Under the pieces are notes generated by a model. It did not search any database and was not told the origin of the DNA. It saw only the letters and a list, made by a program, of their open reading frames with translations. Positions 3,901 to 51,880 of a DNA stretch of 64,000 nt are shown in pieces. Position 1 is the first letter of the stretch; the number at the start of each line of letters is the position of its first letter. The stretch spans positions 67,828,001-67,892,000 of the forward strand of contig NC_043002.1 of NCBI RefSeq assembly GCF_006345805.1. The letters run 5' to 3'. The DNA is from Octopus sinensis. Its lineage: Eukaryota. The position numbers and the translations under genes are program-made.

Positions 3901-6900
3901 GGTCTCATTTTTGCTGAACCCTTAGAATATGGGAATGTTAACAAACCAACACCAGTTGACAAACACAAAGATGTGCAAACAAGCATGTGCAAATGGACAC
4001 ACACGTACAAAGTTATGAATTTGGTGAGCTTCTGCACAGTTTCCATCTACCAGATTTACTCACAAGGTATTTGTTGGTCAATTTAAGGCTATAGCAGAAG
4101 ATAGTAGCCCAAAGTACTGCACAGTAGGACTGAACCTGAAACAGTATGGGTGCAAAGCAATTTTTTAACAACACAACCATAGCTGTGCCTAAATGCTGGT
4201 TATAGATTTAAAATTATTTTATTACAAATAGTTGACAAGTGACCTAGTATTTTAAAGAAGAAATACATAAAAAGATGAAATTATATATATATATTTATAT
4301 ATATATATATTGAAGTGTACAGTATTATTTATCCATTATGGCTGATCTTACTAATCGGTTTCACACTAGGGGTTCAATGGAATGTTAGATAACAGTCTGA
4401 TTATGTAACCCTGCACTCTTCAGAGGTAGCCATTATGGAATGAAATATGGCATTAAATATTAAAGCAATATATTAAGAGGATTAAGTAAGGTTTTTTTTT
4501 TTAAAGAAATGCAAAGAAAGATATTTAGAAATATATGTTTGTGCATTTGTAATATATATATTTTGACTAAATTTCTCTACAGGAAGCAATGTCAGAGATT
4601 AACACCAGTATTCTTCAAGCTGCAGTGGAAGAAAAGCTCCCTGTTAAAGTCGCTGTGAATCGAAACATTGTTGACAGTATAAAATCAATACTTAATTTGT
4701 TCAAGTATGTTTTAAGCTTTTCTTTGCAAATAAATTAGCTCCTCACCTATCCTTTAGATCTACTGAAGAGTCAGGGAAGGTAATCATCGTTAAACCATTA
4801 AAAGAAAAATTGTTAGTTGTGCATCTGAACAATATGTACAATAAACTCATTATTATTAGAATCAGACAAAGAAAATTCACTTCATTTGGAGTTTACATAA
4901 AGTTAACTTTGAAAAATTAACAAAAAGTTTTCATAAATGCAATATATAGTTTAATAAATATTTATTTATTCATTTCAAAGGACAGAATTAGAAATATGGT
5001 TGCATAACTTGATCTGAACATAATTTTTGTGTATTTCATTCCACATAAATTTAACCATGCAACATGGTGAAATGGTTGTTTGCATGTCACACATTCTTTC
5101 CAGTACCAGGAGCCTCTATGTATGCTGTGGTTTGCAGTCAATAAATAAATACAGTAGAGTCCAGGTCATTCTTTTACTGTAAAATGGCCCTGGTTGTTTC
5201 TTAGCTAGCAATTATCTTTAAACTCAATTGATTACCTCTCTTCAATTCTTCAAAGGATTTAAACACTAGATGAATGTCGTGATTTAAAATGAAAAAAAAA
5301 AAAATAACAATGTAATATTTACACAGAGACTTTTAGCATTAAAAATTGTTTCTTTCTTTATTAAAGAAATAGTAGTTAAAAACTATTCCATTATTTTTTT
5401 TGTAACTCATAGCTAGAGAAAATGAGTTTAAATCTAATTTATTAATTACATTAGAGATTTCTTTATCTTTTATTTATTTATTCGGGTCATCATTGAAAGT
5501 AAGCAAAAGATTACATATTTATGGAGGAGGTTATAATTGATTAGATTGATTTAATTACTTAAACAGTTCTTATTTTACCAACCTCCACTGGAAATTGGTA
5601 AAAATTTATTTATTCAGGTCATCATTGAAAGTAAGCAAAAGATCACATATTTATGGAGGAGGTTATAATTGATTAGATTGATTTAATTACTTAAACAGTT
5701 CTTATTTTACCAACCTCCACTGGAAATTGGTAAAAATTGTGTCATGACCAATTACTAGCCTCTACTTTTTCTTCTTTTTCCTCAAGCTGTAGGACTCAAT
5801 GCTGGCTTCTTTGGTGTATAAGTGACTAAGATCACAGCACTCACTTTGAATAGGACACTGGTCTGTTGCAGAGTTCAAGGCCAACAGTTTTGAGGGGAAG
5901 GGGCAAGCCATGTATATTGACCCTAGAATTTGACTGGTACTTTATTTTATTGACCCTGTTGGGATGGAAGGCAAAATTGACCTTGGCATGATTTGAAATT
6001 GGAACATAAAGAGCCAGAAGAAATGTCATTATGAGTTTTGTACAAAATGCTAATAATTGTGCCAGCTCACTGGTTCCTACATATTTTGTCATAATCCTTT
6101 GTACTCAAAGCACAAGGCCTCAAATTTTGGGGGAAGGGATTAAGTCAATTACATCGACCCGAGTGTGTAACTGGTACTAATTTTATCGACCCCAGAAGGT
6201 TGAAAGGCAAAGTCAACCTTGGCGGAATTTGAACTCAGAATGTAGCGATGGGTGAAATACTGCTAAGCATCTAATCCAGCGTGCTAACGATTCTGCCAGC
6301 TCGCCGCCTTACATATTTTGTCATAATGAACCATTTTGAAAAACCACTGCTGCTGGTAACATCTTAAATTCAGCCTCACATTCCTCTTGAAAAGTTGCAA
6401 ATTAATGACTGCAGAAAAACCTACACTGCAAAAGAATTATAGGAGGTCAATATTCTGAGAAAGAAGCCTAAGACATAGTGTTCAGTGCAAGGACTGGTTG
6501 GTGGATACAGTATACCATGTTTTACCTTTGTGCATTCAGTTTTCGACAATAACATGGATACTGTTATGAATTAGAATATTTGCATATTCTTGGAGTCATT
6601 GTCTTTTGAAGCTCAGTGCTTAATTTCTCATTTAGGAATGAAACTGGTCTGTCACTAATGGAAACTGAGGCTAAGAAAAATGGGAGAATTTAATAGAAAA
6701 ACTCTTTGTTCTAAATGCCAGAATGGCTAACTGGCTTCCATGCCGGTGACACATAAAAGGCACCATTTGAGTGTGATCATTACCAGCGTTGCCTTACTGG
6801 CACTTGTGCCAGTGGCATGTGAAAAAACATTCAAGTGAGGTCGTTGGACTGACTCCTGTGCTGGTGGCACATAAAAAACACCACTTGAGCGTGGCCGTTG

Positions 6901-14894: not shown

Positions 14895-16105
14895 CATATA
14901 TATATAAAAACGATAAATGTCAGCCTTTTCAAGCCTAGCCAGGCTCATGGGCCCTGTTTCCCGGTTTCTGTGGCGTATGTGTTCCCCCCAGCTGATGGGA
15001 TGCCAGTCCATCACAGCGTTACTCAAGAAACAGGAAGAGAGAGTGAGAGAAAGTTGTGGCGAAAGAGTACAACAGGGATCACCGCCACCCCCTGCTGGAG
15101 CCTTGTGGAACTTTTAGGTGTTTTCATTCAATAAACACACACAATGCCCGGTCTGGGAATTGAAACCGCGATCCTCCGACCGCAAGTCCGCTGCCCTAAC
15201 AACTGAGCCATTGCGCCTCCACACACATACTCACACACACACACACACACACACGTATATACAGGGCGCAATGTCATCAAAATTACACAAAAATGAAAAT
15301 AACGCAGACATCCCATTTTAACAGATATATTTACCAAAATTACATAAAAATATTTTTAAATACTAAAGAGTAAATTTATCCAATAAAATTATCATTGGCT
15401 TCAACCACGGCCTCCAGACGACTTCAGAATCTCCTACAATTTTTCTGAACAGTCTTCTTGTTTAAGATGGTGAATGCTGCCATAATCCTTGCCTTCAGTT
15501 CATCTTTGGTTTTCAATGAGTTTTGTTGGTCTCTCTCTCAACTGCGCCCTACACATAATAATGAAGTGGGTTGCAATCTGGGGAGTTAGGTGGCCAGATG
15601 TTAGGAGTGATGTGCTTGCAGAAATTGCCTGACAGTCATGACTGGGTTCTCCTGTTTGTGTGGCATGGTGCAGCGTCCTGTTGCCAGACACAGGTTTTCC
15701 AGTAGCCACCCTCTCTATCTCCTCCAGGCACTTGATGTATGCTTCTGTGTTGAGTCTGAGGCTGTGTGGGAAGATGAATGGAGGCATGGTGTTGCCATCA
15801 CTAGTGATCACTCCAAACACCATGATGTTGACTGGATGTTTGGCTTTTATCACTCTTCATACATGTCCTCAGACTGATACCCAAACGCTCTGAAGTGTTT
15901 GTATTGGAGCTCCTAGCGCAAATGCCAAGCAGTACAGCATGTCGTTTCCAAATTTCTGGCAGAGTGACTTACATCGTGATGCTGCTTTTCTGAGAGATGG
16001 TGCCCAACTGACCCTACTATACTGTGTAGTCGACAAAATCAAAAACAAACAATGCGCATGCACAAAATTAGAAATATAAAATGACAACAATTTATCCATT
16101 GCATC

Positions 16106-25841: not shown

Positions 25842-27431
25842 CATACACACACATATATGTAATGCATATATGTATATACACATAATCACACATAATTTAA
25901 ATAACATTTTGTGCTGTTTACCTTAACTTCCATTGAAGTTTTTATCCTTCACTCGATTTAAACTCACCATTTAAATTATTATTGGCAGGAGTTGCTACTC
26001 TTGGTTTGAAATTTTTGTTTCTCTGACAGGAGCAGCTTCTAAAGAGAATTTTTCACCTTTTTCCCTTCATGACAGAAATTATATTTTACTCCAGAATGGC
26101 TACATTTTATTTGCTGATTATTTACATCAGTTATTCAGTTGAACGGGATTTGATTTTATGTTCGTCTATCATTTCTTGTTTGTTCCCCTAAAAGAATCGC
26201 AAAAATATTTCAAAGAAGGCATTCTTACTGATGAAATATGTGAATTATTTGAACATACTCTGGTATATAGAATTTATACATACATACGTGTGTGTGTGTG
26301 TATAAATAGTGAGAGCTTTTTCTCTGCAGAAGTTATTTGTCCAGAAAAATTCCATGTTTTTATAATTATTATTATTATTATCGATTCATTTTTCACTGTT
26401 TGGGTTTGTTATAGAGTAATTAATTAGCATTAATCAAGAATGATTGCTTATTCACTTTTGTGAGACATTATTAATATTTCTGTATAAATGCTGTATAAAT
26501 CCAGCAATCTTTTAATTGTAAAACAATTAGTTATTTTAATTATTTTAATCCAGGAACCAAATATTTCTGGAAAGGGGTTTACCATACTAGATGTCATTAT
26601 TTCATTTTTACCATTTAACAAGTTTAGCAAATTTTCTTTGTTTTGATTTTCATTTAGCGATATGCTCAAAACTGGTTTTTATTAAAAGAAGAAACAAGAC
26701 TTCTGTTTGAAATTTAGATCACAAAATAGCATTCTGGTTTAAGCAATTTCAAAGATAACTTAATTTACTTGTTTTGTTTTTTTTTTCTTTTTTCTTATCC
26801 ATTTTGCACATTTCATTGAAATAGTATTTTAATAAAAGAACAATCGGCGTTATTCTAAGATATGCAGTAATCCAAGGTATATAATAATTGAAAATTAAAT
26901 GAAAGATTAAATGTAGACTTTAGAGGTAGCTATGAATAAAACTTGATTGATTGAATCTGTAAGTTGCACAGATCATGTCTCTTACTGTTGTTGCAGCTCA
27001 ATGTTATAAAACATTTATGTTTTGCAGAGAGTTGAATCAAGTAAAACAACAGGGATTGAAACAGTACAAAAAGAAATAAATATTCAAAATGTGAAAAATA
27101 AATATGTAAAGGAATTTGTGGTGGGATGGGAGAAATATTATTTCGGTAACAATGGTGAAGCTGCTTTAAATGTCTGCTTGGTGCTAACATACTAGGTTTA
27201 CATAAGTTACATAATCACAGATAGTTTGCAAAAAATAAACTTTTAATAATAAACATAATCTTAATTATTTAAAAAAAAAAAGCAAGCAATATATATAGTT
27301 TTTGTTATGGTTTTGTTTTCTTCTAGTTTTGAAAGAAAATGTCTTTTTTTTTTCCTTTCATGTTTAATGTATTGGGCCCCTATAACCAAGATAAATTAAG
27401 AATGTGATTCTAAACAAAATAAATTAACAAC

Positions 27432-30400
27432 CTACTGTCCTTTCCAGGGGTCAACTTGCATTTTAGCATACATATCGAAAAAACAAATTTGATAGTTTTT
27501 ATCACCGTTATTGTCCCAAAAGACATTATCACCAGCTTGATAACAAACCGCAAACTGCATTTTAGTATTAAAAACTGTCGGTACATTCATTTCAAAGGTG
27601 TACGTTTCATATGGATATGTGTATTCTGTATTAGACAAGCTAGCAGGTACATCTATGCAAGTCTTCCATCCATCAAAACTGCATCGTATAAATACGGTTT
27701 TCTTTACATTTAAATTTTTAACTTTGATGCTACCAGTTAACATGAAGTCCTTATTAAAAACGTGTTCTAAAGCTACAAAGTCTCTCTCAAGGCGGCTTTT
27801 AAAAGTGACATAATCAGCAGCAGGTTTAGAAACATTCAAGCAAATAGCTGATTTTCTAATATGTTTGGTTTCTTTTATAGATGAAGCCACATCCCAAGAG
27901 GAATTACTTGAGAAAGATGTCACACCTTTCTTCAACACACTTGGGTAGCATTTTGGTAACACAGCTTCAGTTTCACTTGAACGGAATTTGGAAAGCATTT
28001 CTTGCTGAATAGTATGGGTTGATACTATTTCATAGTTCTTATTGTCGTTATTGTCCCAATAAGTCTGATCATCACTTTTGTAGCAAACTGCAAAAACAAC
28101 ATGCATGATTTCTTCGAAGGACACTGGCATGGTTAAGGCAAAGCTAAAAGTTTCATATTGATTCGGGAAGCTGCTAGGGGTATGTGTGGCAGGAATATCT
28201 ACGGATGTCTCCCAAAGATTAAATGAGCAACGGAGAAAAACAGATTTCTTATTACCCATTGGTTTTATTTTCACAGTTCCAAGAATTATGTTATTTCGAA
28301 GGAGAACATTTTCAAGTGAAACATATGTCGTTTCAAGTCTGTTACGAAATGTGACATAGTCAGCAGCTGGTTGACGGAAGCGTAGAGAAAAGATTTGTTG
28401 AGTTGCCGGCGCCTCTTTATCATTTGAACTGGACAAATCTATCTGAGAACTTCTAGGTGATGATGATGATGTTGTGGATCCATTTGGTGATGTCATTACA
28501 ATCTTTGGAATATCTGAACTGATGGAACATTTGGATCGATCTGATTGAGCATCTGAGCTGAGTTCTTCCTGTAATTCCTCCATTAAAGCCATTGAAAACA
28601 TCTCACTAGTTTTCAATGTTGACTGACGTCTAAGCTTTGGTGATGGCAAAAGTTCACTGTCATCAGTTTCAATTTGATTTTCATTTTCTTTCAAAGATTT
28701 AGCAAGAATTTCTTTTGTTTCTAAAACCTCTTTAATTTTGGAACTTTTATCTATTGAACAACCACTGTCTTCAGCCTCTTTGTCTTTATTTTCTGACAGT
28801 GTGGTTTCAGTTGTTGGGTCTTGAAGCTGTATACATGAAGGGTCACTGGTAGAATCCGTTGATGAATCTAGAATATTTTCTTCAGTGAATTCATGTTTGA
28901 TATTGTCTGTGGTTTCATCACTTGGTAATTCATTGTCAGACTTTGCTTTCGTTGGTCCTTTCTCTGACTCTGATTCTTGCCTTTGTAATGCATCAGTTTT
29001 GGCAATAGGATAACCAAAATCAGGTTCAAGTATCACTTTTTTCTCTTCGGGATCACTTAAGCTGAAACATTCAAGTTCGTGTGACATCATTCGAGGTAAT
29101 TTGCTTTCAGTTTTGTTTTCATTATTTGAATTATTTTGTTTCTGAGATGAAGGGTGCCTGACTTTACTCAACAAATCAACTCTTACGTCTGATACAGGTG
29201 ATGAACATGAGGCATCAGTATCACTATTGAGGGAAATATCTCTTTTAAATGTCGATAAATCTTTAGCAATGTCTTCAAATTCAAAGGATCCACTCCTGTT
29301 AATCATTGGAGCTGAGTGTGGTATTTGAGGTTTCTTTTTAAACGATGGATGTGTTGTGCCAGTTTTAACATCAGCATCTGTTACTTCGTCTTGGCTACTG
29401 TGACCACTGGATCCTTCTAAAACTGCAAATCTTTTTTCATTGCCTTTCAAAGAGAACTGAGAAAATTCAGAAAAATGTTGATCTCTATCACCAGATGAAT
29501 AATAATCACTTGTAATTGATTGATCTAATAAATCATTATCATATGAAACATGTCCTCCATGCTGGAAGGAATCACTGTCATAAGATGCAAGAAGTTGTTC
29601 ATTGTTGTCTAGGAGGGAAATTCGCTCATTCTCTACGGAACGATCATCGTAACCAGATGAATGAGATATTGCTTCTTCCAGGAAATGTGACTCATTCAGA
29701 TTTGCAAGCAAATTAGTGTCTTCACTAATATCTAAAGAATGAGAACCATCTCTCTGGAAATAAATATTTTCTTCATTCAGATCCAATAATTCACCTCCTG
29801 TTTCACTGACACTCATAAACTCTTCCTTGCTGAATCCTTCTTTTTCAAGAAGTTCTCGAAATTCAAGAAATTCCTCAGGAGGGGACGGAAATTCGTTATC
29901 GTTTTCATTTTCTCGTTGATCGTTATTATCTGGTGTAGCTCTGTTTAAATGGTTCCCATTTTGACTATCTTTTCTGTCATCCTGTGTTTTTTCTACATCT
30001 CCATCATTATCATATGGAAATGTAGAAGAAGAGCATTCACTGGGTGAAAAAGATGGGGCATCATTTTCAAATGATGTCTCTCTCTGGATCTGTTCTTCTT
30101 CTGGGGGCAGGTCAACTGAATCAGATGTGGTGTCAAAATTAGTGGAAGCATTATTATTTGCTAGTTCATCTTCAAATGACACTTTTTTATCAAGAATATA
30201 TTTTCCAAAGGATTTCAGTGGATATTCTCTGAAACTTTCTTGGGTTGTTTCATTTTGAGAAATACATTTTTGAGCATTGTCAATGCAGCTTGACACAGTC
30301 TTATCTGCAAAATCTGATATATTTGTTGGAGAAGAAAATTCCATCAATTTATTCTCTGGTGTCAGGGAATCATGGGAACTGTCAGAATCAGGAAGGAAAA

Positions 30401-31760
30401 GGTCTGTAGAACACACAGTTTCTGAATCAGTAGATAGCTGGCAATTTCTTTTACTTTGTATAGGTGGTGTAGACTCAAGGAATGTTTCTTCATCATCAGC
30501 ATCATGTTCATCGTCATCTTCCCAAAGGTAAGTACGTGAGTCTTGAGGAAGTAATTGTTGTTTTTCTGGGACATTATGATAGCCATCAAAAGAACAAAGA
30601 TCATAAGATTCCTCTGAAAGTGGATTGTCCACAACACGCACTTGGACCATTTTGTCTTCATCTAATGCTGTATAAGAACTGTCTGTGCTGATTTGGAATT
30701 TTGGTTCGCCTCTATTATTAGCTGATTTGTGATATGGATAATCATCATAACCTGGAGTCATATCCCATTTATCTGTCAGGGACTGAGAACTGTCTGTAAA
30801 TGCTTCATTGTTGTGTACCAAAGTAGAAACAATGCATTCCTTGAAAACCTTATAACCTCCATTTGAATCTCTTTTAATAATTGTCTTCTCTTCTTTATGC
30901 AGTGAGCCAGAGCTATGTTTAAAACCCTCGTTAATATAATCTAATACCTTGGGTTTATCATTGGTTTCATCTTCTTTAAAAGTGAAAGATTGATTTCGGA
31001 GACTATCCAGTACACTTCCATTTGCAATGTCAACAAGGACTGATTCATGAATCTTCTCTGGTGGATCAACATTGGCAGTGTTGAGACGTTTGGGCTGTTC
31101 TAAACAGACACAGTTTTGTGAGACTTCAGGCTTCGTTTCTATTATTTTAGCAACTGTGGGAGTAAGTTCAATAACAGGTGACAACCTTACTTCGATAAAA
31201 GGAGGGGTCTCCTCTCTGGCAAAACGGGTACAAAATTCATCATTTGGTGTCTTTTCTCTAATGAAATCTGGTTGGTCTAATTGTCCTTGTTCAGTTGTAT
31301 AAGATACATAAGCTTTCAATGGTGTTCCACCACACTTTTTCGAAAGGATTGGTTGACGGTCATTGATATCAGGGCTGCCATCCTCAATAGACTTGGAAAG
31401 AGATCTGTTTTTAAATCGTTCTTTGAGCTCTTTTATCATAGGATCCTCGCTATATCCTGCAATAGCAGTTGGAGGTTTCGTGTAGACCGGATGAATTAGT
31501 GGATTTGCATTGGAGTTTTTATTAGAATGTGCACAAATTTTTGTCGGCGAAGCAAGGAGCACGTTAATTTTCTCAAAACTGTGCGTCTTTTCTTCATTAC
31601 TCGATTCAGGCTGTCTTTCAATAATATGGAGATCGTGAGGTTTTAACGAAGCAGCGATCGGTGTCTTCTCCTCCAGGGGCTTCGCCGCGGGTTTTGAAAA
31701 GTCACCGTGTTCATCGTCATCAGCATGACAACATCCCATACGAGAGAAATAATTCCCCAT
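27432..31760 (-). CDS. PPP1R3-like glycogen-targeting protein with two tandem C-terminal CBM21 domains, single coding exon, 1442 aa
   Basis: Uninterrupted 4329-nt ORF. There is an in-frame TAA shortly upstream of the ATG and a good Kozak context (agaATGG). Two repeats of (F/L)xxxQ/KPAADYxxFxxRL...VxLEx...GTVxI/VK...VFxRxSF..W...FAVCY......WDNN...NY are the CBM21 signature of the PPP1R3 family. RVxF-type KKVSF at aa 525-529. The exact orthologue cannot be assigned. Confidence 0.9.
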   Translation of the reverse strand: MGNYFSRMGCCHADDDEHGDFSKPAAKPLEEKTPIAASLKPHDLHIIERQPESSNEEKTHSFEKINVLLASPTKICAHSNKNSNANPLIHPVYTKPPTAIAGYSEDPMIKELKERFKNRSLSKSIEDGSPDINDRQPILSKKCGGTPLKAYVSYTTEQGQLDQPDFIREKTPNDEFCTRFAREETPPFIEVRLSPVIELTPTVAKIIETKPEVSQNCVCLEQPKRLNTANVDPPEKIHESVLVDIANGSVLDSLRNQSFTFKEDETNDKPKVLDYINEGFKHSSGSLHKEEKTIIKRDSNGGYKVFKECIVSTLVHNNEAFTDSSQSLTDKWDMTPGYDDYPYHKSANNRGEPKFQISTDSSYTALDEDKMVQVRVVDNPLSEESYDLCSFDGYHNVPEKQQLLPQDSRTYLWEDDDEHDADDEETFLESTPPIQSKRNCQLSTDSETVCSTDLFLPDSDSSHDSLTPENKLMEFSSPTNISDFADKTVSSCIDNAQKCISQNETTQESFREYPLKSFGKYILDKKVSFEDELANNNASTNFDTTSDSVDLPPEEEQIQRETSFENDAPSFSPSECSSSTFPYDNDGDVEKTQDDRKDSQNGNHLNRATPDNNDQRENENDNEFPSPPEEFLEFRELLEKEGFSKEEFMSVSETGGELLDLNEENIYFQRDGSHSLDISEDTNLLANLNESHFLEEAISHSSGYDDRSVENERISLLDNNEQLLASYDSDSFQHGGHVSYDNDLLDQSITSDYYSSGDRDQHFSEFSQFSLKGNEKRFAVLEGSSGHSSQDEVTDADVKTGTTHPSFKKKPQIPHSAPMINRSGSFEFEDIAKDLSTFKRDISLNSDTDASCSSPVSDVRVDLLSKVRHPSSQKQNNSNNENKTESKLPRMMSHELECFSLSDPEEKKVILEPDFGYPIAKTDALQRQESESEKGPTKAKSDNELPSDETTDNIKHEFTEENILDSSTDSTSDPSCIQLQDPTTETTLSENKDKEAEDSGCSIDKSSKIKEVLETKEILAKSLKENENQIETDDSELLPSPKLRRQSTLKTSEMFSMALMEELQEELSSDAQSDRSKCSISSDIPKIVMTSPNGSTTSSSSPRSSQIDLSSSNDKEAPATQQIFSLRFRQPAADYVTFRNRLETTYVSLENVLLRNNIILGTVKIKPMGNKKSVFLRCSFNLWETSVDIPATHTPSSFPNQYETFSFALTMPVSFEEIMHVVFAVCYKSDDQTYWDNNDNKNYEIVSTHTIQQEMLSKFRSSETEAVLPKCYPSVLKKGVTSFSSNSSWDVASSIKETKHIRKSAICLNVSKPAADYVTFKSRLERDFVALEHVFNKDFMLTGSIKVKNLNVKKTVFIRCSFDGWKTCIDVPASLSNTEYTYPYETYTFEMNVPTVFNTKMQFAVCYQAGDNVFWDNNGDKNYQICFFDMYAKMQVDPWKGQ

Positions 31761-32357
31761 TCTTCTTTATTATTACACAGAAGAATCTAAAAAAATAAAA
31801 CAAACACAATAAAAATTTTGCGACAAACAAAAACCACGTTCGGCAATGCCGAAAATAAACGTCCTTGAGGTAAACTACACTGTCAGGAAGCAACGTCAAG
31901 GTCACTGATGTTTTTCTCTACAACACTAACACAGCATCGCTAGCGCAGACATGTGTTTATAATAGACCTGTTGAACGGCACCAGTAGACACAATCATCCT
32001 TCCCACAAAATTAAAATTTTGATGAATATTATAATGATGAAGAGGGGGAAACATCATATCCAATAAGAAATAACGATAATGTAATTTTATCAATGAAATT
32101 ACTACCTTGAAAACGGAAAAGTAATCGATAAAAAATGTGAAACGGAAATTGTTCGATCCACAATTTACGTACATAAAAGCGTATTTTTTCTCTCTCTAAT
32201 TATATCGTTTTAGTTTTAATTTTACATTCCGTCACTGTCAATTTTTTTTTACCCGTTAGTATTATGTAAAGCAATGTTTTTATTATCATAATTAGTAGAT
32301 TCCTTAACACATTCCTCTTGAGTACCCGTATAGCTTTACCTACTAATATACCCAGTC

Positions 32358-32360
<3 letters not shown>

Positions 32361-32403
<43 letters not shown>
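32361..32403. repeat. (CT)n microsatellite
   Basis: About 21 perfect units. Confidence 0.95.
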
Positions 32404-32406
<3 letters not shown>

Positions 32407-32692
32407 CACACACTCTCTCTCTAGCGTTCTTCTATCAATGACCGTGATGAGATTATAATTAATAAATCATACATGCAGTAATATAAACAAGCAACGTTAT
32501 TACTGTGGGGCGACATTAAAAGAGATATGGGTATAGAGTCGGTTTTTATTTTTTTACGTGAGATGAGTTCTAGATTCACTTGTAGCGGCACAATCCATTA
32601 TACACTCACTGCACCATCTTAACCCTTCGTCTTTCAGACACTGACCAAAAACTCATTAAAATAAAAAAAATTTTAAATGCCATATATCTACC

Positions 32693-32695
<3 letters not shown>

Positions 32696-32737
<42 letters not shown>

Positions 32738-32747
32738 AGAGAGAGAG
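32696..32747. repeat. (GA)n microsatellite
   Basis: About 18 perfect units plus an interrupted extension. Confidence 0.95.
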
Positions 32748-48010: not shown

Positions 48011-48809
48011 AAGAATTACTTGTACCAGTCAGATAATTGATTAGACCACCCCACCTCCTCCACCTGTGTATGTGGTAAGGAGTATATTTCCTAACTACTT
48101 GGTTCTGGGTTCGGTCCTACTATGTGGCACCTTAAGGAAATATCTTATACTTTAGCTGCGAACCGGCCAAAGCCTTATAAGTGGATTTGGTGGACGGAAA
48201 TTAAAAGCACACACACACGCATACATACATACATACATACACACGCACGCACACATACATACATGTGCGCGCGCACACATTCATACACACACACACGCAC
48301 TCACACTCATACATCTAAAAATTGAACAGAAGGACGACAAAGGAACAGACGGAAATTTTACACACAAGACATGGACATGCTCTTTCCTCGTCAGTTATCG
48401 TCCAGAAATCATCACAATGTCACACCTTTAACGATAATATTGTTCATTTTGATGGCGTCAACAGCAAAAAGCTGCTGGGAATAACTGAGCGAACATGAAG
48501 GACGGTAACGAAAACAAACACGATACACGTAGTTGGTACAAATATGAATGAATATACAAACAAAATAAAGGCCCTACGGCTCTGACACAGCATTAAAACA
48601 AGAGATGTGTATAAGTAATACAATGGAAAATGATGTCCTATAGGACTGGAAAAAGAAAGTGGAGATGAAAAGGTGGAAAGATAGATAGAACGAAACGTGG
48701 AAGAAAAAAAACGAATTAGTTCTGAAGGTAGAGGAGATGAGAAGAGTCAGGAGATGCGTGATTAAACAGGTCAGCTGTGAAGCGAAAAACCAGGAAGCTG
48801 AAAGGAGAA

Positions 48810-49095
48810 GATGAGAGAGAAAGAAAGGGAGAAAGACAGAAAGAGAGAGGGGGAGTGAAAGAGAGATAGAAATTGATAGAGAGAGTGATGGAGGAAGAGA
48901 GAGAGATGGAGAAACAGAGAGCGATGGAGAAACAGAGATAGATGGAAAAAGAGAGAGAGATGGAGAAAGAGAGAGATAGAGAAAGAGAGACAGATGGAGA
49001 GAGAGAAAGAAACAGACGGAGAGAAAGAGAGAGACAGACAGACAGGGAGAAGTAGTAAAGGGCAGAGAAAAAACCCGAGGAAGAGATAAAAGCAA
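48810..49095. repeat. Purine-rich degenerate (GA)n/GAGAAA low-complexity tract
   Basis: Almost pure A/G on the + strand; produces the LSLSVS-type ORFs in the track. Confidence 0.9.
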
Positions 49096-50789: not shown

Positions 50790-51880
50790 AAAAACCTTGG
50801 TGGGCCTCAATTACTTCAAGGTTTTTTTTTTAAGTTGTTCGAGGTTAGCCATTTTGGATCTAAAGATGGACTCGAAAGCTAGGTCAGTAACTGGGGCTCA
50901 AAGGGAGCACCATGCTGGTGAAGGAGGAATCACGATTGAAGGGAAGGAGTCAACAAATAGTTTAGTAGTGTGCTCATGCAAAGCTGAGTGGTTGAGGAGC
51001 CAGAGCTTGCATTTGGAGCTGTTAACACTAACGCCTCTATGACCAAGCATCTCGATCATCGTCTCGCAGTTGCAAGCACCCTGTCAGGAGCCCCCTTCCC
51101 CCCAAAGCATCATTGAGGTCCCAGGCATTTATGTGTATGTCGGCTTCCATCTTCGTAACAATGCGAATAAGGCAGGACCAAGTGGATCACCCTGTTGGAC
51201 TCCAGAAGCAGATGGGATGAGGTGATCACCAAACGAGAGGTAGGAGGACTCCCGATAGGCTTGCCCAGCAAAGTGATGAAGTGGTGGGGAATTCTCCCTT
51301 ACTGCACGGAGAATGACGTCTCGACTGATGAAGTTAAAAGCATTTTTAAAGTCAAGTTTGAGGATGAACTTTGGGGACTCAGAGGACAAGTTGGTGAAAA
51401 TCCTGGTGGCATGAGCAGCAGTCTCACAACCTAGCTTAGTACCCACTCCTAGCTGAATAGGGGAAAATTCTTCAGGCAATTAGAAACTGAGGACAAGCAC
51501 AATTTTGCTGTGAGCCGTCACAGAGTGCAACCCGCAGCTATGGGGCGAAGGTAACCGTTGGACTTGGTGAGACCAAATAGTTTGGTCCAAAGAACAGGGG
51601 ACGAATGTAGGCAAGGACGCTCTCGGACGAGAACAAGTTTATGAACTGTGTTAGGTTCTCCAAGAGTTCGAGCCCAGCATCACCAGTTGACAGGGAGATA
51701 TCATTCTTGAGATGATGAGGTCGTAAGCCATCGATCCCAGCGCCAGAACCTGCTGGAAAGGAGGTGAAGATGGGTCAGGGGTGAAGATGCGTTGTAGAAA
51801 ACTTGGTGGGTCGGACCAGTGTAGATGATCATCAGTAGGGGATATTAGTATAGCCTGAAATCTGTCTTGATTGAACAGAC
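50790..51880 (-). mobile_element. CRE-clade-like non-LTR retrotransposon reverse-transcriptase fragment
   Basis: LTKSNGYLRPIAAGCTL*RLTAKL followed by ORF 51129..51479 (QLGVGTKLGCETAAHA...LKLDFKNAFN...SGVQQGDPLGPALF), then VNSSKCKLW. Frameshifted. Confidence 0.8.

What the first reader, a model, noticed from the sequence alone, without database searches (positions are those of the whole stretch)
27480..28400. Two tandem CBM21 glycogen-binding domains in one PPP1R3-like protein
Seen: two complete CBM21 units at aa ~1121-1247 and ~1306-1428. PAADYVTF is at aa 1131 and 1313, and WDNN..KNY at aa 1235 and 1415. The duplication is still visible in the DNA (gtgacatagtcagcagctgg versus gtgacataatcagcagcagg). 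Established: the PPP1R3A-G glycogen-targeting subunits and yeast Gac1 each carry a single CBM21. Inference: an internal duplication gave a bivalent glycogen or glycogen-synthase binder, possibly lineage-specific.
Basis: partly seen in the sequence, partly recalled or inferred. Interest (0 to 1): 0.75.

Follow-up and report, generated by a model that had tools for sequence, protein, structure and literature searches.

The report
Octopus PP1-regulator-like protein with two CBM21 domains
An octopus gene encodes a very long protein of the glycogen-targeting PP1-regulator type that ends in two real CBM21 sugar-binding domains; the pair is old, is found in octopuses and cuttlefish only, and both copies have lost the family's main glycogen-gripping residues.

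Summary
One uninterrupted 1442-aa ORF (window 27432-31760, minus strand; Octopus sinensis chromosome CM016864.1) ends in two complete CBM21 domains. They are aa 1121-1250 and 1303-1431, scoring 83 and 87 bits against a Pfam cut-off of 28.9. All motif positions and DNA 20-mers are as stated.

- **Age:** the pair is not a recent duplication. The domains are about 41% identical, no closer to each other than to single-domain PPP1R3 proteins, and synonymous positions show no residual similarity.
- **Distribution:** the architecture occurs in Octopus, Argonauta and two cuttlefish-type species. An exhaustive search of 1.84 billion representative proteins found it nowhere else, so it looks specific to coleoid cephalopods.
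- **Selection:** both domains are under strong purifying selection (dN/dS 0.03).
- **Binding sites:** both lack the primary glycogen site (VxNxxFEKxV motif and aromatic clamp), which about 91% of 175 single-domain relatives keep. Both retain the second site (WxNxGxNYx).

The rest of the protein is a cephalopod-only, mostly low-complexity region. It carries a conserved MG...CC N-terminus and one conserved KKVSF PP1-docking-type motif.

Most likely it is a divergent, possibly membrane-anchored PP1 scaffold that compensates for weak single-site binding with two modules. No paper describes it. Interest is moderate.

The parts
27432..31760 (-). Complete single-exon coding sequence (1442 aa plus stop) of the cephalopod tandem-CBM21, PPP1R3-like protein
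   Evidence: ORF list. The identical protein is called on Octopus sinensis CM016864.1. There is an in-frame stop 9 nt upstream of the ATG. Orthologues of 1423-1594 aa exist in other coleoids.
31728..31760 (-). N-terminus MGNYFSRMGCC: Gly2 with Ser6, plus Cys10-Cys11. This fits an N-myristoylation and palmitoylation-type signal, which is inference from the motif only.
   Evidence: Conserved in Octopus spp., in Argonauta (MGNHFSRMGCC) and in the cuttlefish-like P0202 (MGNYFSRMGCC). The Acanthosepion model starts at the internal MGCC.
30174..30188 (-). KKVSF (aa 525-529), the only RVxF-type PP1-docking motif in the protein
   Evidence: A regex scan gives a single hit in 1442 aa. It is positionally conserved in all five orthologues (K-K/M-V-S-F-E), inside a region that is otherwise 43% identical between octopus and cuttlefish.
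28620..28631 (-). RRQS (aa 1044-1047), a basophilic-kinase-type site within the invariant block LRRQSTLKTSEMF, about 75 aa before D1
   Evidence: Invariant in all orthologues. Its function is inferred.
28011..28400 (-). CBM21 domain 1 (aa 1121-1250)
   Evidence: Pfam CBM_21 83.4 bits, profile 2-112/113. AF2 beta-sandwich with pLDDT 84-93. 81% identical between octopus and cuttlefish. dN/dS 0.056.
28239..28268 (-). D1 counterpart of the family glycogen-binding motif VxNxxFEKxV. It reads IKPMGNKKSV, so Asn, Phe and Glu are all replaced.
   Evidence: Gap-free alignment to human PTG 175-184. Motif definition from PMC9287172. Ligand contacts from PMC9582199.
28026..28058 (-). D1 WDNNDNKNYEI, the retained WxNxGxNYx(I/L) / site I motif
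   Evidence: W, N and N aligned with PTG W246, N248 and N253 are all present. Coordinates.
27855..28010 (-). Inter-domain linker (aa 1251-1302). A helix follows D1, then a stretch predicted to be flexible.
   Evidence: AF2 gives a helix at aa 1248-1261 followed by pLDDT below 50, with pTM 0.47. Identity to octopus is 92% in Argonauta and 58% in cuttlefish. No Pfam hit.
27468..27854 (-). CBM21 domain 2 (aa 1303-1431)
   Evidence: Pfam CBM_21 87.1 bits, profile 2-112/113. AF2 pLDDT 76-87. 83% identical between octopus and cuttlefish. 0 non-synonymous against 7 synonymous changes versus a sister Octopus species.
27693..27722 (-). D2 counterpart of VxNxxFEKxV. It reads VKNLNVKKTV, with Phe replaced by Val and Glu by Lys. 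The cuttlefish orthologues read VKNIEGEKKV and VKHIEGEKKI (Phe replaced by Gly).
   Evidence: for octopus and Acanthosepion; for the second cuttlefish-like orthologue.
27486..27518 (-). D2 WDNNGDKNYQI, the retained WxNxGxNYx(I/L) / site I motif
27435..27467 (-). C-terminal tail AKMQVDPWKGQ. Its Trp aligns with the conserved Trp in the tail of single-domain PPP1R3B-like proteins and with W1289 after D1.
   Evidence: Alignment A4. This is weak evidence, resting on a single invariant column.

Best explanation
SHOWN: The window carries the Octopus sinensis copy of a coleoid-cephalopod-specific member of the PP1 glycogen-targeting (PPP1R3) superfamily.
- It is a single-exon 1442-aa protein.
- About 1100 N-terminal residues are acidic, Ser/Thr-rich, have no known domain, and have no homologue outside cephalopods.
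- Two complete CBM21 beta-sandwich modules follow, joined by a linker of about 50 residues with no confidently predicted fixed orientation.
- The two-module architecture predates the octopus-cuttlefish split.
- Both modules are the most conserved parts of the protein and are under strong purifying selection.
- In both modules the primary glycogen site of the family (site II: VxNxxFEKxV plus the Phe/Tyr clamp) is degenerate. The second surface (site I: Arg, two Trp, two Asn of WxNxGxNYx) is fully intact.

INFERRED:
- The protein docks PP1 through its single conserved KKVSF motif.
- It is tethered to a membrane by N-terminal myristoyl/palmitoyl groups (MG...CC).
- It uses two weak, site-I-only CBM21 modules on a flexible tether to hold glycogen particles, or the glucan attached to glycogen synthase/glycogenin, by avidity rather than by one strong site.
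- It thereby places PP1 next to glycogen-bound substrates at a membrane.

Whether the pair arose by internal duplication or by joining two already diverged paralogues is not resolved.
For: - **Architecture and fold:**
- **Source and orthologues:**
- **Rarity:** the exhaustive phmmer search of 1.84 billion representatives drops from 727 and 591 bits (Argonauta, Acanthosepion) to 125 bits.
- **Cephalopod-only N-terminal region:** a profile search of the N-terminal 1120 aa finds four proteins, all coleoid orthologues. That region has no Pfam hit.
- **Constraint:** dN/dS is 0.029 for the tandem region and 0.19 for the N-terminal region. Octopus-cuttlefish identity is 81% (D1) and 83% (D2) against 43% for the N-terminal region.
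- **Site audit:** PTG site II residues N177/F180/E181/K182/Y203/D214 read P/S, N/G, K, K/R, H, E in D1 and N, V/G, K/E, K, L, E/K in D2. Among 175 single-domain relatives, position 180 is F/Y in 166, position 203 is Y/F in 163, and both are aromatic in 160. Site I residues score 5/5 in every D1 and D2.
- **Residue roles from the literature:** PMC9582199, PMC6235537 and PMC9287172.
- **PP1-docking motif:** the RVxF motif is unique in the protein and conserved.
- **Canonical paralogue kept:** cephalopods also retain a single-domain PPP1R3B-like protein with intact RVSF, NxxFEK and WDNN motifs (Argonauta P0003). The tandem protein is therefore an extra, divergent paralogue.
Against: - No binding was measured. 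PP1 docking, lipidation and glucan binding are all inferred from motifs.
- The RVxF motif lies about 590 residues upstream of D1, not the roughly 40-70 residues seen in PTG, GM and the cephalopod single-domain paralogue. It also lacks the canonical 'VSFAD.FG..L' extension.
- About 1.3 RVxF regex matches are expected by chance in 1442 aa (my estimate). Only its conservation supports the motif.
- In GM and PTG, cyclodextrin binding in solution was detected at site II only. Modules that keep site I alone may therefore bind glucan very weakly or not at all.
- The role of the WxNxGxNYx surface is disputed. It is a glycogen synthase recruitment surface according to the GM N228A result, or a sugar site with no direct synthase contact.
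- The linker, although predicted to be disordered, is 92% (Argonauta) and 58% (cuttlefish) identical to octopus. This hints at a function the model does not capture.
Confidence: 0.55

Rival explanations
1. Repurposed modules. The two CBM21 folds no longer bind glycogen. They act as a pair of protein-binding (or other-ligand-binding) domains, for example gripping two subunits of an oligomeric partner such as glycogen synthase. The giant disordered N-terminal region scaffolds PP1 and other factors.
For: Both aromatic clamp residues and the FEK core of the primary sugar site are lost in both domains of every orthologue. The domains nevertheless evolve under very strong constraint. The retained Asn aligned with GM N228 is needed for glycogen synthase dephosphorylation by GM:PP1.
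Against: Site I residues (Arg, two Trp, two Asn) contact beta-cyclodextrin in the PTG crystal. Another study argues that this motif is a sugar site and that the PTG CBM21 does not contact glycogen synthase directly. No partner is known.
Confidence: 0.25
2. A fairly recent, still DNA-visible internal duplication produced a bivalent high-affinity glycogen binder of the ordinary PPP1R3 type.
For: There are two complete CBM21 units in one ORF with shared motifs. The architecture is restricted to one lineage.
Against: Third-codon positions show no excess identity, 28/50 against 24.6 +/- 3.4 expected. The shared motifs are family-wide. D1 and D2 are no closer to each other than to single-domain relatives. 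The pair already existed before octopods and cuttlefish diverged. The canonical glycogen site is degenerate in both.
Confidence: 0.08
3. On origin only. The two CBM21 modules came together by fusion of the C-terminal parts of two already diverged PPP1R3 paralogues, not by duplication within one gene.
For: D1+D2 monophyly appears in 11 of 200 NJ bootstraps. There is no excess of shared rare residues, 3 against a background of 1.4 +/- 1.3. Each domain has single-domain proteins that are more similar to it than the other domain is.
Against: Both share the same rare loss of site II, which only 6 of 175 relatives show. That is more economically explained by one loss before a duplication. Each ranks within the other's top 10-33 of 180 in HMM cross-scoring. 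Each unit is followed by a tail with an aligned Trp. Only 129 columns are available, and the quartet test with matched controls is uninformative.
Confidence: 0.3
4. Artefact. The two domains result from an assembly or gene-model error, such as collapsed or duplicated sequence or two genes read as one.
For: None found.
Against: The 4.3-kb frame is uninterrupted in the raw window. The two copies differ at 59% of residues. The same architecture occurs in six independent assemblies or models. Four independently assembled contigs from another Octopus species are colinear with window 25867-32386. Purifying selection acts on both copies.
Confidence: 0.01

Closest known systems
PPP1R3B / GL-type glycogen-targeting PP1 subunits, including oyster CgPPP1R3B and the cephalopod single-domain 'PPP1R3B-like' protein (Argonauta P0003)
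   Same: They share the CBM21 fold with its N-terminal strand and helix, the QPAADY start and the WDNN..NY motif. D1's best solved-structure match by sequence is human GL 2EEF, E 4.7e-29. The most similar single-domain relatives include the cephalopod P0001 and oyster sequences. There is an RVxF-type K-K-V-S-F motif upstream.
   Different: The known proteins are about 300-350 aa with one CBM21. Their RVSF motif lies about 60 residues before the domain, and their NxxFEK glycogen motif is intact. CgPPP1R3B co-sediments with glycogen (PMC6396720). Here the protein is 1442 aa with two CBM21 domains, site II is degenerate in both, the RVxF is about 590 residues upstream, and the N-terminal region is cephalopod-only.
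PPP1R3C / PTG (structures 7QF7, 7QFA, 7QM2)
   Same: This is the best structural match, with target TM-score 0.90 and rmsd 1.5 A. D2's best solved-structure match by sequence is PTG, E 3e-24. PTG site I residues R187, W193, W246, N248 and N253 are conserved in both octopus domains.
   Different: PTG binds beta-cyclodextrin mainly at site II through N177, F180, E181, K182, Y203 and D214. The octopus domains keep one to three of these six site classes. PTG has one CBM21 and a SALK motif, whereas no SILK-type motif was found here.
PPP1R3A / GM, the large membrane-anchored glycogen-targeting subunit of muscle
   Same: It is a very long protein (1109 aa) that combines an RVxF motif, a CBM21 domain and a long non-globular region. 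It is tethered to membrane, and a PKA-type site regulates it; both points are from my own knowledge of GM. The octopus protein likewise has a putative membrane signal and a conserved RRQS site.
   Different: GM has one CBM21 near its N-terminus, a C-terminal transmembrane anchor and an intact site II centred on F155. The octopus protein has the opposite layout: a lipid-type signal at the N-terminus and two CBM21 domains at the C-terminus. Its long region shows no sequence similarity to anything outside cephalopods.
Tandem starch-binding modules of other families (three CBM53 in plant and algal starch synthase III; tandem CBM25 in Microbacterium alpha-amylase)
   Same: Several weak glucan-binding modules in series act together. 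This is the mechanism proposed here. CBM53 also matches both octopus domains weakly. Papers on these systems were listed (PMC5715617, PMC4625611, PMC5730167).
   Different: Those modules belong to different CBM families, are attached to enzymes that act on starch, and occur in plants, algae and bacteria. They are not a metazoan PP1-regulator-like scaffold. The resemblance is functional analogy only and was not tested here.

Membership tests
PPP1R3 glycogen-targeting PP1 regulatory subunits | RVxF/RVSF PP1-docking motif N-terminal to the CBM21 (PMC9287172) | tested here: met
   KKVSF at aa 525-529 is the only regex match in the protein and is conserved in all five orthologues. However, it lies about 590 aa upstream of D1 and lacks the canonical 'FAD.FG..L' continuation. 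PP1 binding itself was not tested.
PPP1R3 glycogen-targeting PP1 regulatory subunits | CBM21 domain | tested here: met
   There are two domains, at 83.4 and 87.1 bits against a cut-off of 28.9. The fold matches PTG CBM21 with TM-score 0.90.
PPP1R3 glycogen-targeting PP1 regulatory subunits | Glycogen-binding motif VxNxxFEKxV (site II) | tested here: not met
   D1 reads IKPMGNKKSV and D2 reads VKNLNVKKTV. The Phe and Glu are replaced in both domains in all orthologues, and the partner Tyr (PTG Y203) becomes His or Leu. Of 175 single-domain relatives, 160 keep both aromatic residues.
PPP1R3 glycogen-targeting PP1 regulatory subunits | Putative glycogen-synthase-binding / site I motif WxNxGxNYx(I/L) | tested here: met
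   D1 has WDNNDNKNYEI and D2 has WDNNGDKNYQI. W, N, N-Y and I are kept; the Gly is replaced or shifted by one position.
PPP1R3 glycogen-targeting PP1 regulatory subunits | One CBM21 per polypeptide, as in PPP1R3A-G | tested here: not met
   There are two complete domains. Every other retrieved relative has one.
PPP1R3 glycogen-targeting PP1 regulatory subunits | Physical binding to the PP1 catalytic subunit and to glycogen | not testable with these tools
   This needs pull-down, ITC or co-sedimentation experiments.
CBM family 21 (starch/glycogen-binding modules) | Beta-sandwich fold with two sugar sites: site I (Trp-rich tray) and site II (aromatic clamp) | tested here: inconclusive
   The fold is met. 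Site I residues score 5/5 in both domains. The site II clamp is absent in both. Sugar binding was not measured.
N-myristoylated / palmitoylated membrane-anchored proteins | Met-Gly start with a small residue at position 6 and nearby Cys residues | tested here: met
   MGNYFSRMGCC is conserved in octopods and in a cuttlefish-like species. There is an in-frame stop 9 nt upstream of the ATG. The evidence is at motif level only, and the modification was not tested.

The most novel reading that the evidence does not exclude
Coleoid cephalopods evolved a lineage-specific, lipid-anchored giant PP1 scaffold. Its two CBM21 modules have both given up the ancestral glycogen clamp. They now act as a bivalent reader of something other than bulk glycogen: two subunits of glycogen synthase, or glucan primers on glycogenin, held at a membrane. 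This would be a new way of organising glycogen metabolism, and a natural experiment separating the two disputed functions of the CBM21 surfaces.
Probability: 0.2. Interest if true: 0.6.

Novelty: new variant of a known kind. Interest (0 to 1): 0.42.

Why it matters
- **Architecture.** PPP1R3 proteins are described as having one CBM21, and nothing in the searched literature reports two. This protein shows that the family can be built differently.
- **A natural separation of the two sites.** Two modules retain only the WxNxGxNYx / site I surface. What that surface does is disputed: glycogen synthase recruitment (PMC6235537) or a second sugar site (PMC9287172). These domains are ready-made reagents to test what that surface does without the dominant site II.
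- **Cephalopod biology.** It adds a large, conserved, cephalopod-only gene to the set of coleoid innovations. It suggests membrane-localised control of glycogen metabolism in these animals.

It is not a new principle. Multivalent glucan-binding modules and PP1 targeting subunits are both well known.

Tried and rejected
- **Are D1 and D2 each other's closest relatives?** Four approaches gave no resolution on 129 columns.
  - NJ with 200 bootstraps: D1 and D2 each monophyletic 200/200, D1+D2 together 11/200.
  - Shared rare residues: 3, within the background of 1.4 +/- 1.3.
  - Cross-scoring with D1-only and D2-only HMMs: each domain ranks among the other's top 10-33 of 180, level with oyster and cephalopod single-domain proteins.
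  - Four-point quartet test: 57-87% of quartets favour D1D2|XY, but matched long-branch control pairs give 58 +/- 18%.
- **DNA trace of the duplication.** Rejected.
- **Word-indexed protein search with the tandem region.** It returned only single-domain proteins and missed the orthologues. The exhaustive search and the N-terminal profile search found them.
- **Logan contigs L003-L006 as evidence for transcription or introns.** They are colinear with the window at 93-94% identity and break at a microsatellite. They cannot be told apart from genomic contigs, so no claim about expression is made.
- **Relatives with '2 stretches'** (P0038, P0118, P0129, P0137, P0145, P0170, P0022). All are single CBM21 domains split by an insert.
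- **Other PP1 motifs.** SILK and MyPhoNE gave no match.
- **Pfam on the N-terminal 1120 aa and on the linker.** Nothing found.
- **Rfam on the window.** Nothing found.
- **Assembly or gene-model artefact.** Rejected (see rival explanations).
- **Literature searches** for tandem or two CBM21 domains, PPP1R3 in cephalopods, and the gene and protein identifiers. Nothing relevant was found.
Full report
**What is in the sequence**

The finding lies at the 3' end of the only long reading frame in the 64-kb window. That frame is 27432-31760 on the minus strand and encodes 1442 aa. The identical protein is called on Octopus sinensis chromosome CM016864.1 of assembly GCA_006345805.1.

Pfam CBM_21 matches the protein in two stretches, 153.6 bits in total against a cut-off of 28.9. 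Scanned separately:
- D1, aa 1121-1250: 83.4 bits.
- D2, aa 1303-1431: 87.1 bits.
- Each covers profile positions 2-112 of 113.

D1 against D2 gives 43% identity at E 1e-41.

AlphaFold2 on aa 1100-1442 gives two confident beta-sandwiches. Each has the extra N-terminal strand and helix typical of PPP1R3 CBM21 domains. A helix follows D1, and the roughly 45-residue connection has low confidence; pTM of 0.47 means no fixed mutual orientation is predicted.

**How widespread the architecture is**

The protein belongs to a 90%-identity cluster with O. bimaculoides XP_014778619.1 ('uncharacterized protein LOC106875140'; UniProt 'CBM21 domain-containing protein'), O. vulgaris CAI9724299.1 and a fourth Octopus-like sequence.

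An exhaustive phmmer search with the tandem region against 1.84 billion representative proteins found two proteins matching end to end:
- Argonauta hians GAB1598349.1: 727 bits, 93% identity.
- Acanthosepion (Sepia) pharaonis CAE1256861.1: 591 bits, 76% identity.

The score then falls to 125 bits, and from there on each hit matches only one of the two query domains. The few hits reported with two stretches are single domains interrupted by an insert. A metazoan-type protein with two domains of ordinary similarity would have scored above the third rank. Very distant two-domain proteins could still hide below the 150 hits listed.

A profile of the N-terminal 1120 residues finds only four proteins in 5.8 billion. 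All are coleoid orthologues. One is a second cuttlefish-like sequence, P0202, which is 82% identical to the Acanthosepion protein. The N-terminal region has no Pfam domain.

The gene, with both CBM21 domains, therefore existed before octopods and cuttlefish diverged. From my own knowledge that split is on the order of 250 million years old. The gene is not seen outside coleoids in these databases. Nautilus and squids could not be checked.

**Age and origin of the pair**

The claim that the duplication is still visible in the DNA does not hold.
- The similar 20-mers encode P-A-A-D-Y-V-T, part of a family-wide motif. QP[AS][AST]DY occurs in 93 of 175 single-domain relatives, and WDNN in 120 of 175.
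- At residues identical between D1 and D2, third codon positions agree in 28 of 50 cases, against 24.6 +/- 3.4 expected from the gene's own codon usage.

D1 and D2 are 37-42% identical across species, while each reaches 45-48% with some single-domain proteins. Four tests of whether they are sister domains gave no resolution:
- NJ bootstraps: D1+D2 monophyly in 11 of 200.
- Shared rare residues: no excess.
- HMM cross-scoring: each domain ranks near the top for the other, level with oyster PPP1R3B and the cephalopod single-domain paralogue.
- Quartet test: within the range of matched controls.

Both domains look derived from a molluscan PPP1R3B-like CBM21. Whether they arose by internal duplication followed by long divergence, or by joining two paralogues, stays open. 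Two points favour a single ancestor: the shared rare loss of site II, and an aligned Trp in the tail after each unit. Both points are weak.

**Are both copies functional?**

Both appear to be under selection. Compared with a sister Octopus species (contig L003, 93% nucleotide identity):

| Region | dN/dS or changes |
|---|---|
| N-terminal region | 0.19 |
| D1 | 0.056 |
| D2 | 0 non-synonymous, 7 synonymous |
| Whole tandem region | 0.029 |

Octopus-cuttlefish identity is 81% for D1 and 83% for D2, against 43% for the N-terminal region.

**The binding sites**

Published work defines three family motifs: RVSF, VxNxxFEKxV (glycogen) and WxNxGxNYx(I/L) (putative glycogen synthase binding) (PMC9287172). 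It also defines two sugar sites.
- Site II comprises PTG N177, F180, E181, K182, Y203 and D214, equivalent to GM N152, F155, E156, K157, Y178 and D188. It is the dominant site, and the only one detected in solution.
- Site I comprises PTG R187, W193, Y196, C235, W246, N248 and N253. It is ancillary.
- GM N228, equivalent to PTG N253, is needed for enhanced glycogen synthase dephosphorylation.

The alignment is gap-free in the beta3-beta4 loop and is anchored on both sides. Site II reads as follows:

| PTG residue | D1 | D2 |
|---|---|---|
| N177 | P/S | N |
| F180 | N/G | V/G |
| E181 | K | K/E |
| K182 | K/R | K |
| Y203 | H | L |
| D214 | E | E/K |

Among 175 single-domain relatives:
- Position 180 is Phe or Tyr in 166.
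- Position 203 is Tyr or Phe in 163.
- Position 214 is Asp in 161.
- Both aromatics are kept in 160.
- Only 6 lack both.

The site I residues Arg, Trp, Trp, Asn and Asn are present in every D1 and D2. The cephalopod single-domain paralogue (Argonauta 'PPP1R3B-like', P0003) keeps all motifs. The tandem protein is therefore an additional, divergent paralogue whose two modules both lack the family's main glycogen grip.

**The rest of the protein**

The full-length alignment of orthologues shows islands of conservation in an acidic, Ser/Thr-rich region.
- **N-terminus.** MGNYFSRMGCC is conserved from octopus to a cuttlefish-like species, with an in-frame stop 9 nt upstream. It fits a myristoylation-plus-palmitoylation signal. 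This is motif-level inference.
- **RVxF motif.** The only match is KKVSF at aa 525-529, conserved as K-x-V-S-F-E in all orthologues. The two cuttlefish-type proteins carry a second motif, K-[KR]-R-V-S-F-D-N, about 40 residues downstream, where octopods read RETSF or REMPF.
- **RRQS block.** LRRQSTLKTSEMF, with a basophilic kinase-type RRQS, is invariant about 75 residues before D1.

**Most likely mechanism**

Shown:
- The two-module architecture.
- Its age and constraint.
- The loss of site II with retention of site I.
- The conserved RVxF-type motif and the acylation-type N-terminus.

Inferred:
- The protein is a membrane-tethered PP1 scaffold.
- Its two weak, site-I-only CBM21 modules on a flexible tether bind glycogen particles, or the glucan on glycogen synthase/glycogenin, by avidity. 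This is analogous to the tandem starch-binding modules of starch synthase III or bacterial amylases.

I put this at about 0.55. The main rival, at about 0.25, is that the modules have become protein-binding domains. An assembly artefact is excluded by the continuous frame, the 59% divergence between copies, six independent assemblies and purifying selection.

**Comparison with known systems and novelty**

The protein works like, and is related to, PPP1R3 glycogen-targeting subunits. It meets three family features: the CBM21 fold, the WxNxGxNYx motif and an RVxF motif. It fails two: the VxNxxFEKxV motif and the single-domain layout. Its RVxF motif is also at an atypical distance.

No paper in the searchable library mentions CBM21 or PPP1R3 in cephalopods, these gene identifiers, or a PPP1R3 protein with two CBM21 domains. 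The proteins are in public databases only as 'uncharacterized' or 'CBM21 domain-containing'.

I rate it a new variant of a known kind and of moderate interest. It is not a new principle. It is a clean, conserved natural construct that separates the two disputed CBM21 surfaces, and it is a cephalopod-specific gene.

Noticed in passing
P0033 aa 642-647 and P0202 aa 633-638 (cuttlefish-type orthologues); corresponds to window about 30060-30075 (octopus RETSF): The cuttlefish-type orthologues carry a second, more canonical PP1-docking-type motif (K-[KR]-R-V-S-F-D-N) about 40 residues after the conserved KMVSF. Octopods have RETSF or REMPF at that position. The ancestral protein may therefore have had two RVxF motifs as well as two CBM21 domains.
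   Followed up: partly
window 31761-31800 (minus strand, just upstream of the ATG): A T-rich tract ending in 'ttag' lies about 26 nt before the start codon and looks like a 3' splice acceptor for a 5'-UTR intron. The contigs from a related Octopus species nevertheless run colinearly through it up to window 32386.
   Followed up: partly
window 32360-32422 and 32696-32747: (TC)n and (AG)n microsatellites lie 600-1000 bp upstream of the gene. The four related-species contigs L003-L006 all start at the (TC)n tract.
   Followed up: no
window 51129-51479 (minus strand): A 116-aa ORF weakly matches reverse transcriptase RVT_1 (26.3 bits, below the 29.6 cut-off, E 7e-6). It is probably a decayed retroelement fragment.
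   Followed up: partly
window 15500-15853 (minus strand): A 117-aa ORF has a sequence that, from memory, resembles the C-terminal part of a Tc1/mariner-type transposase. Pfam gave no hit at E <= 0.01.
   Followed up: partly
window 5472-5738: A 132-bp unit is repeated exactly twice at 98% identity, which suggests a recent local tandem duplication in non-coding DNA.
   Followed up: no
window 48800-49045: A GA-rich degenerate repeat array (periods of 8, 18 and 52 bp) produces spurious Ser/Leu-rich ORFs of 181-201 aa on the minus strand.
   Followed up: no
L002 2001-6785 (ENA ERZ21867824 contig ctg120847l): The gene model of the second cuttlefish-like orthologue (P0202, 1594 aa) runs about 50 residues past the conserved C-terminus ...DPWKGQ. 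The tool also reports that the locus does not translate to the query. This is probably a model or stop-codon problem in that assembly.
   Followed up: no
window 1-64000: Apart from this gene, the 64-kb window (36.8% G+C) has no other long ORF with a domain hit and no Rfam family at gathering threshold. The gene sits alone in repeat-rich DNA.
   Followed up: partly
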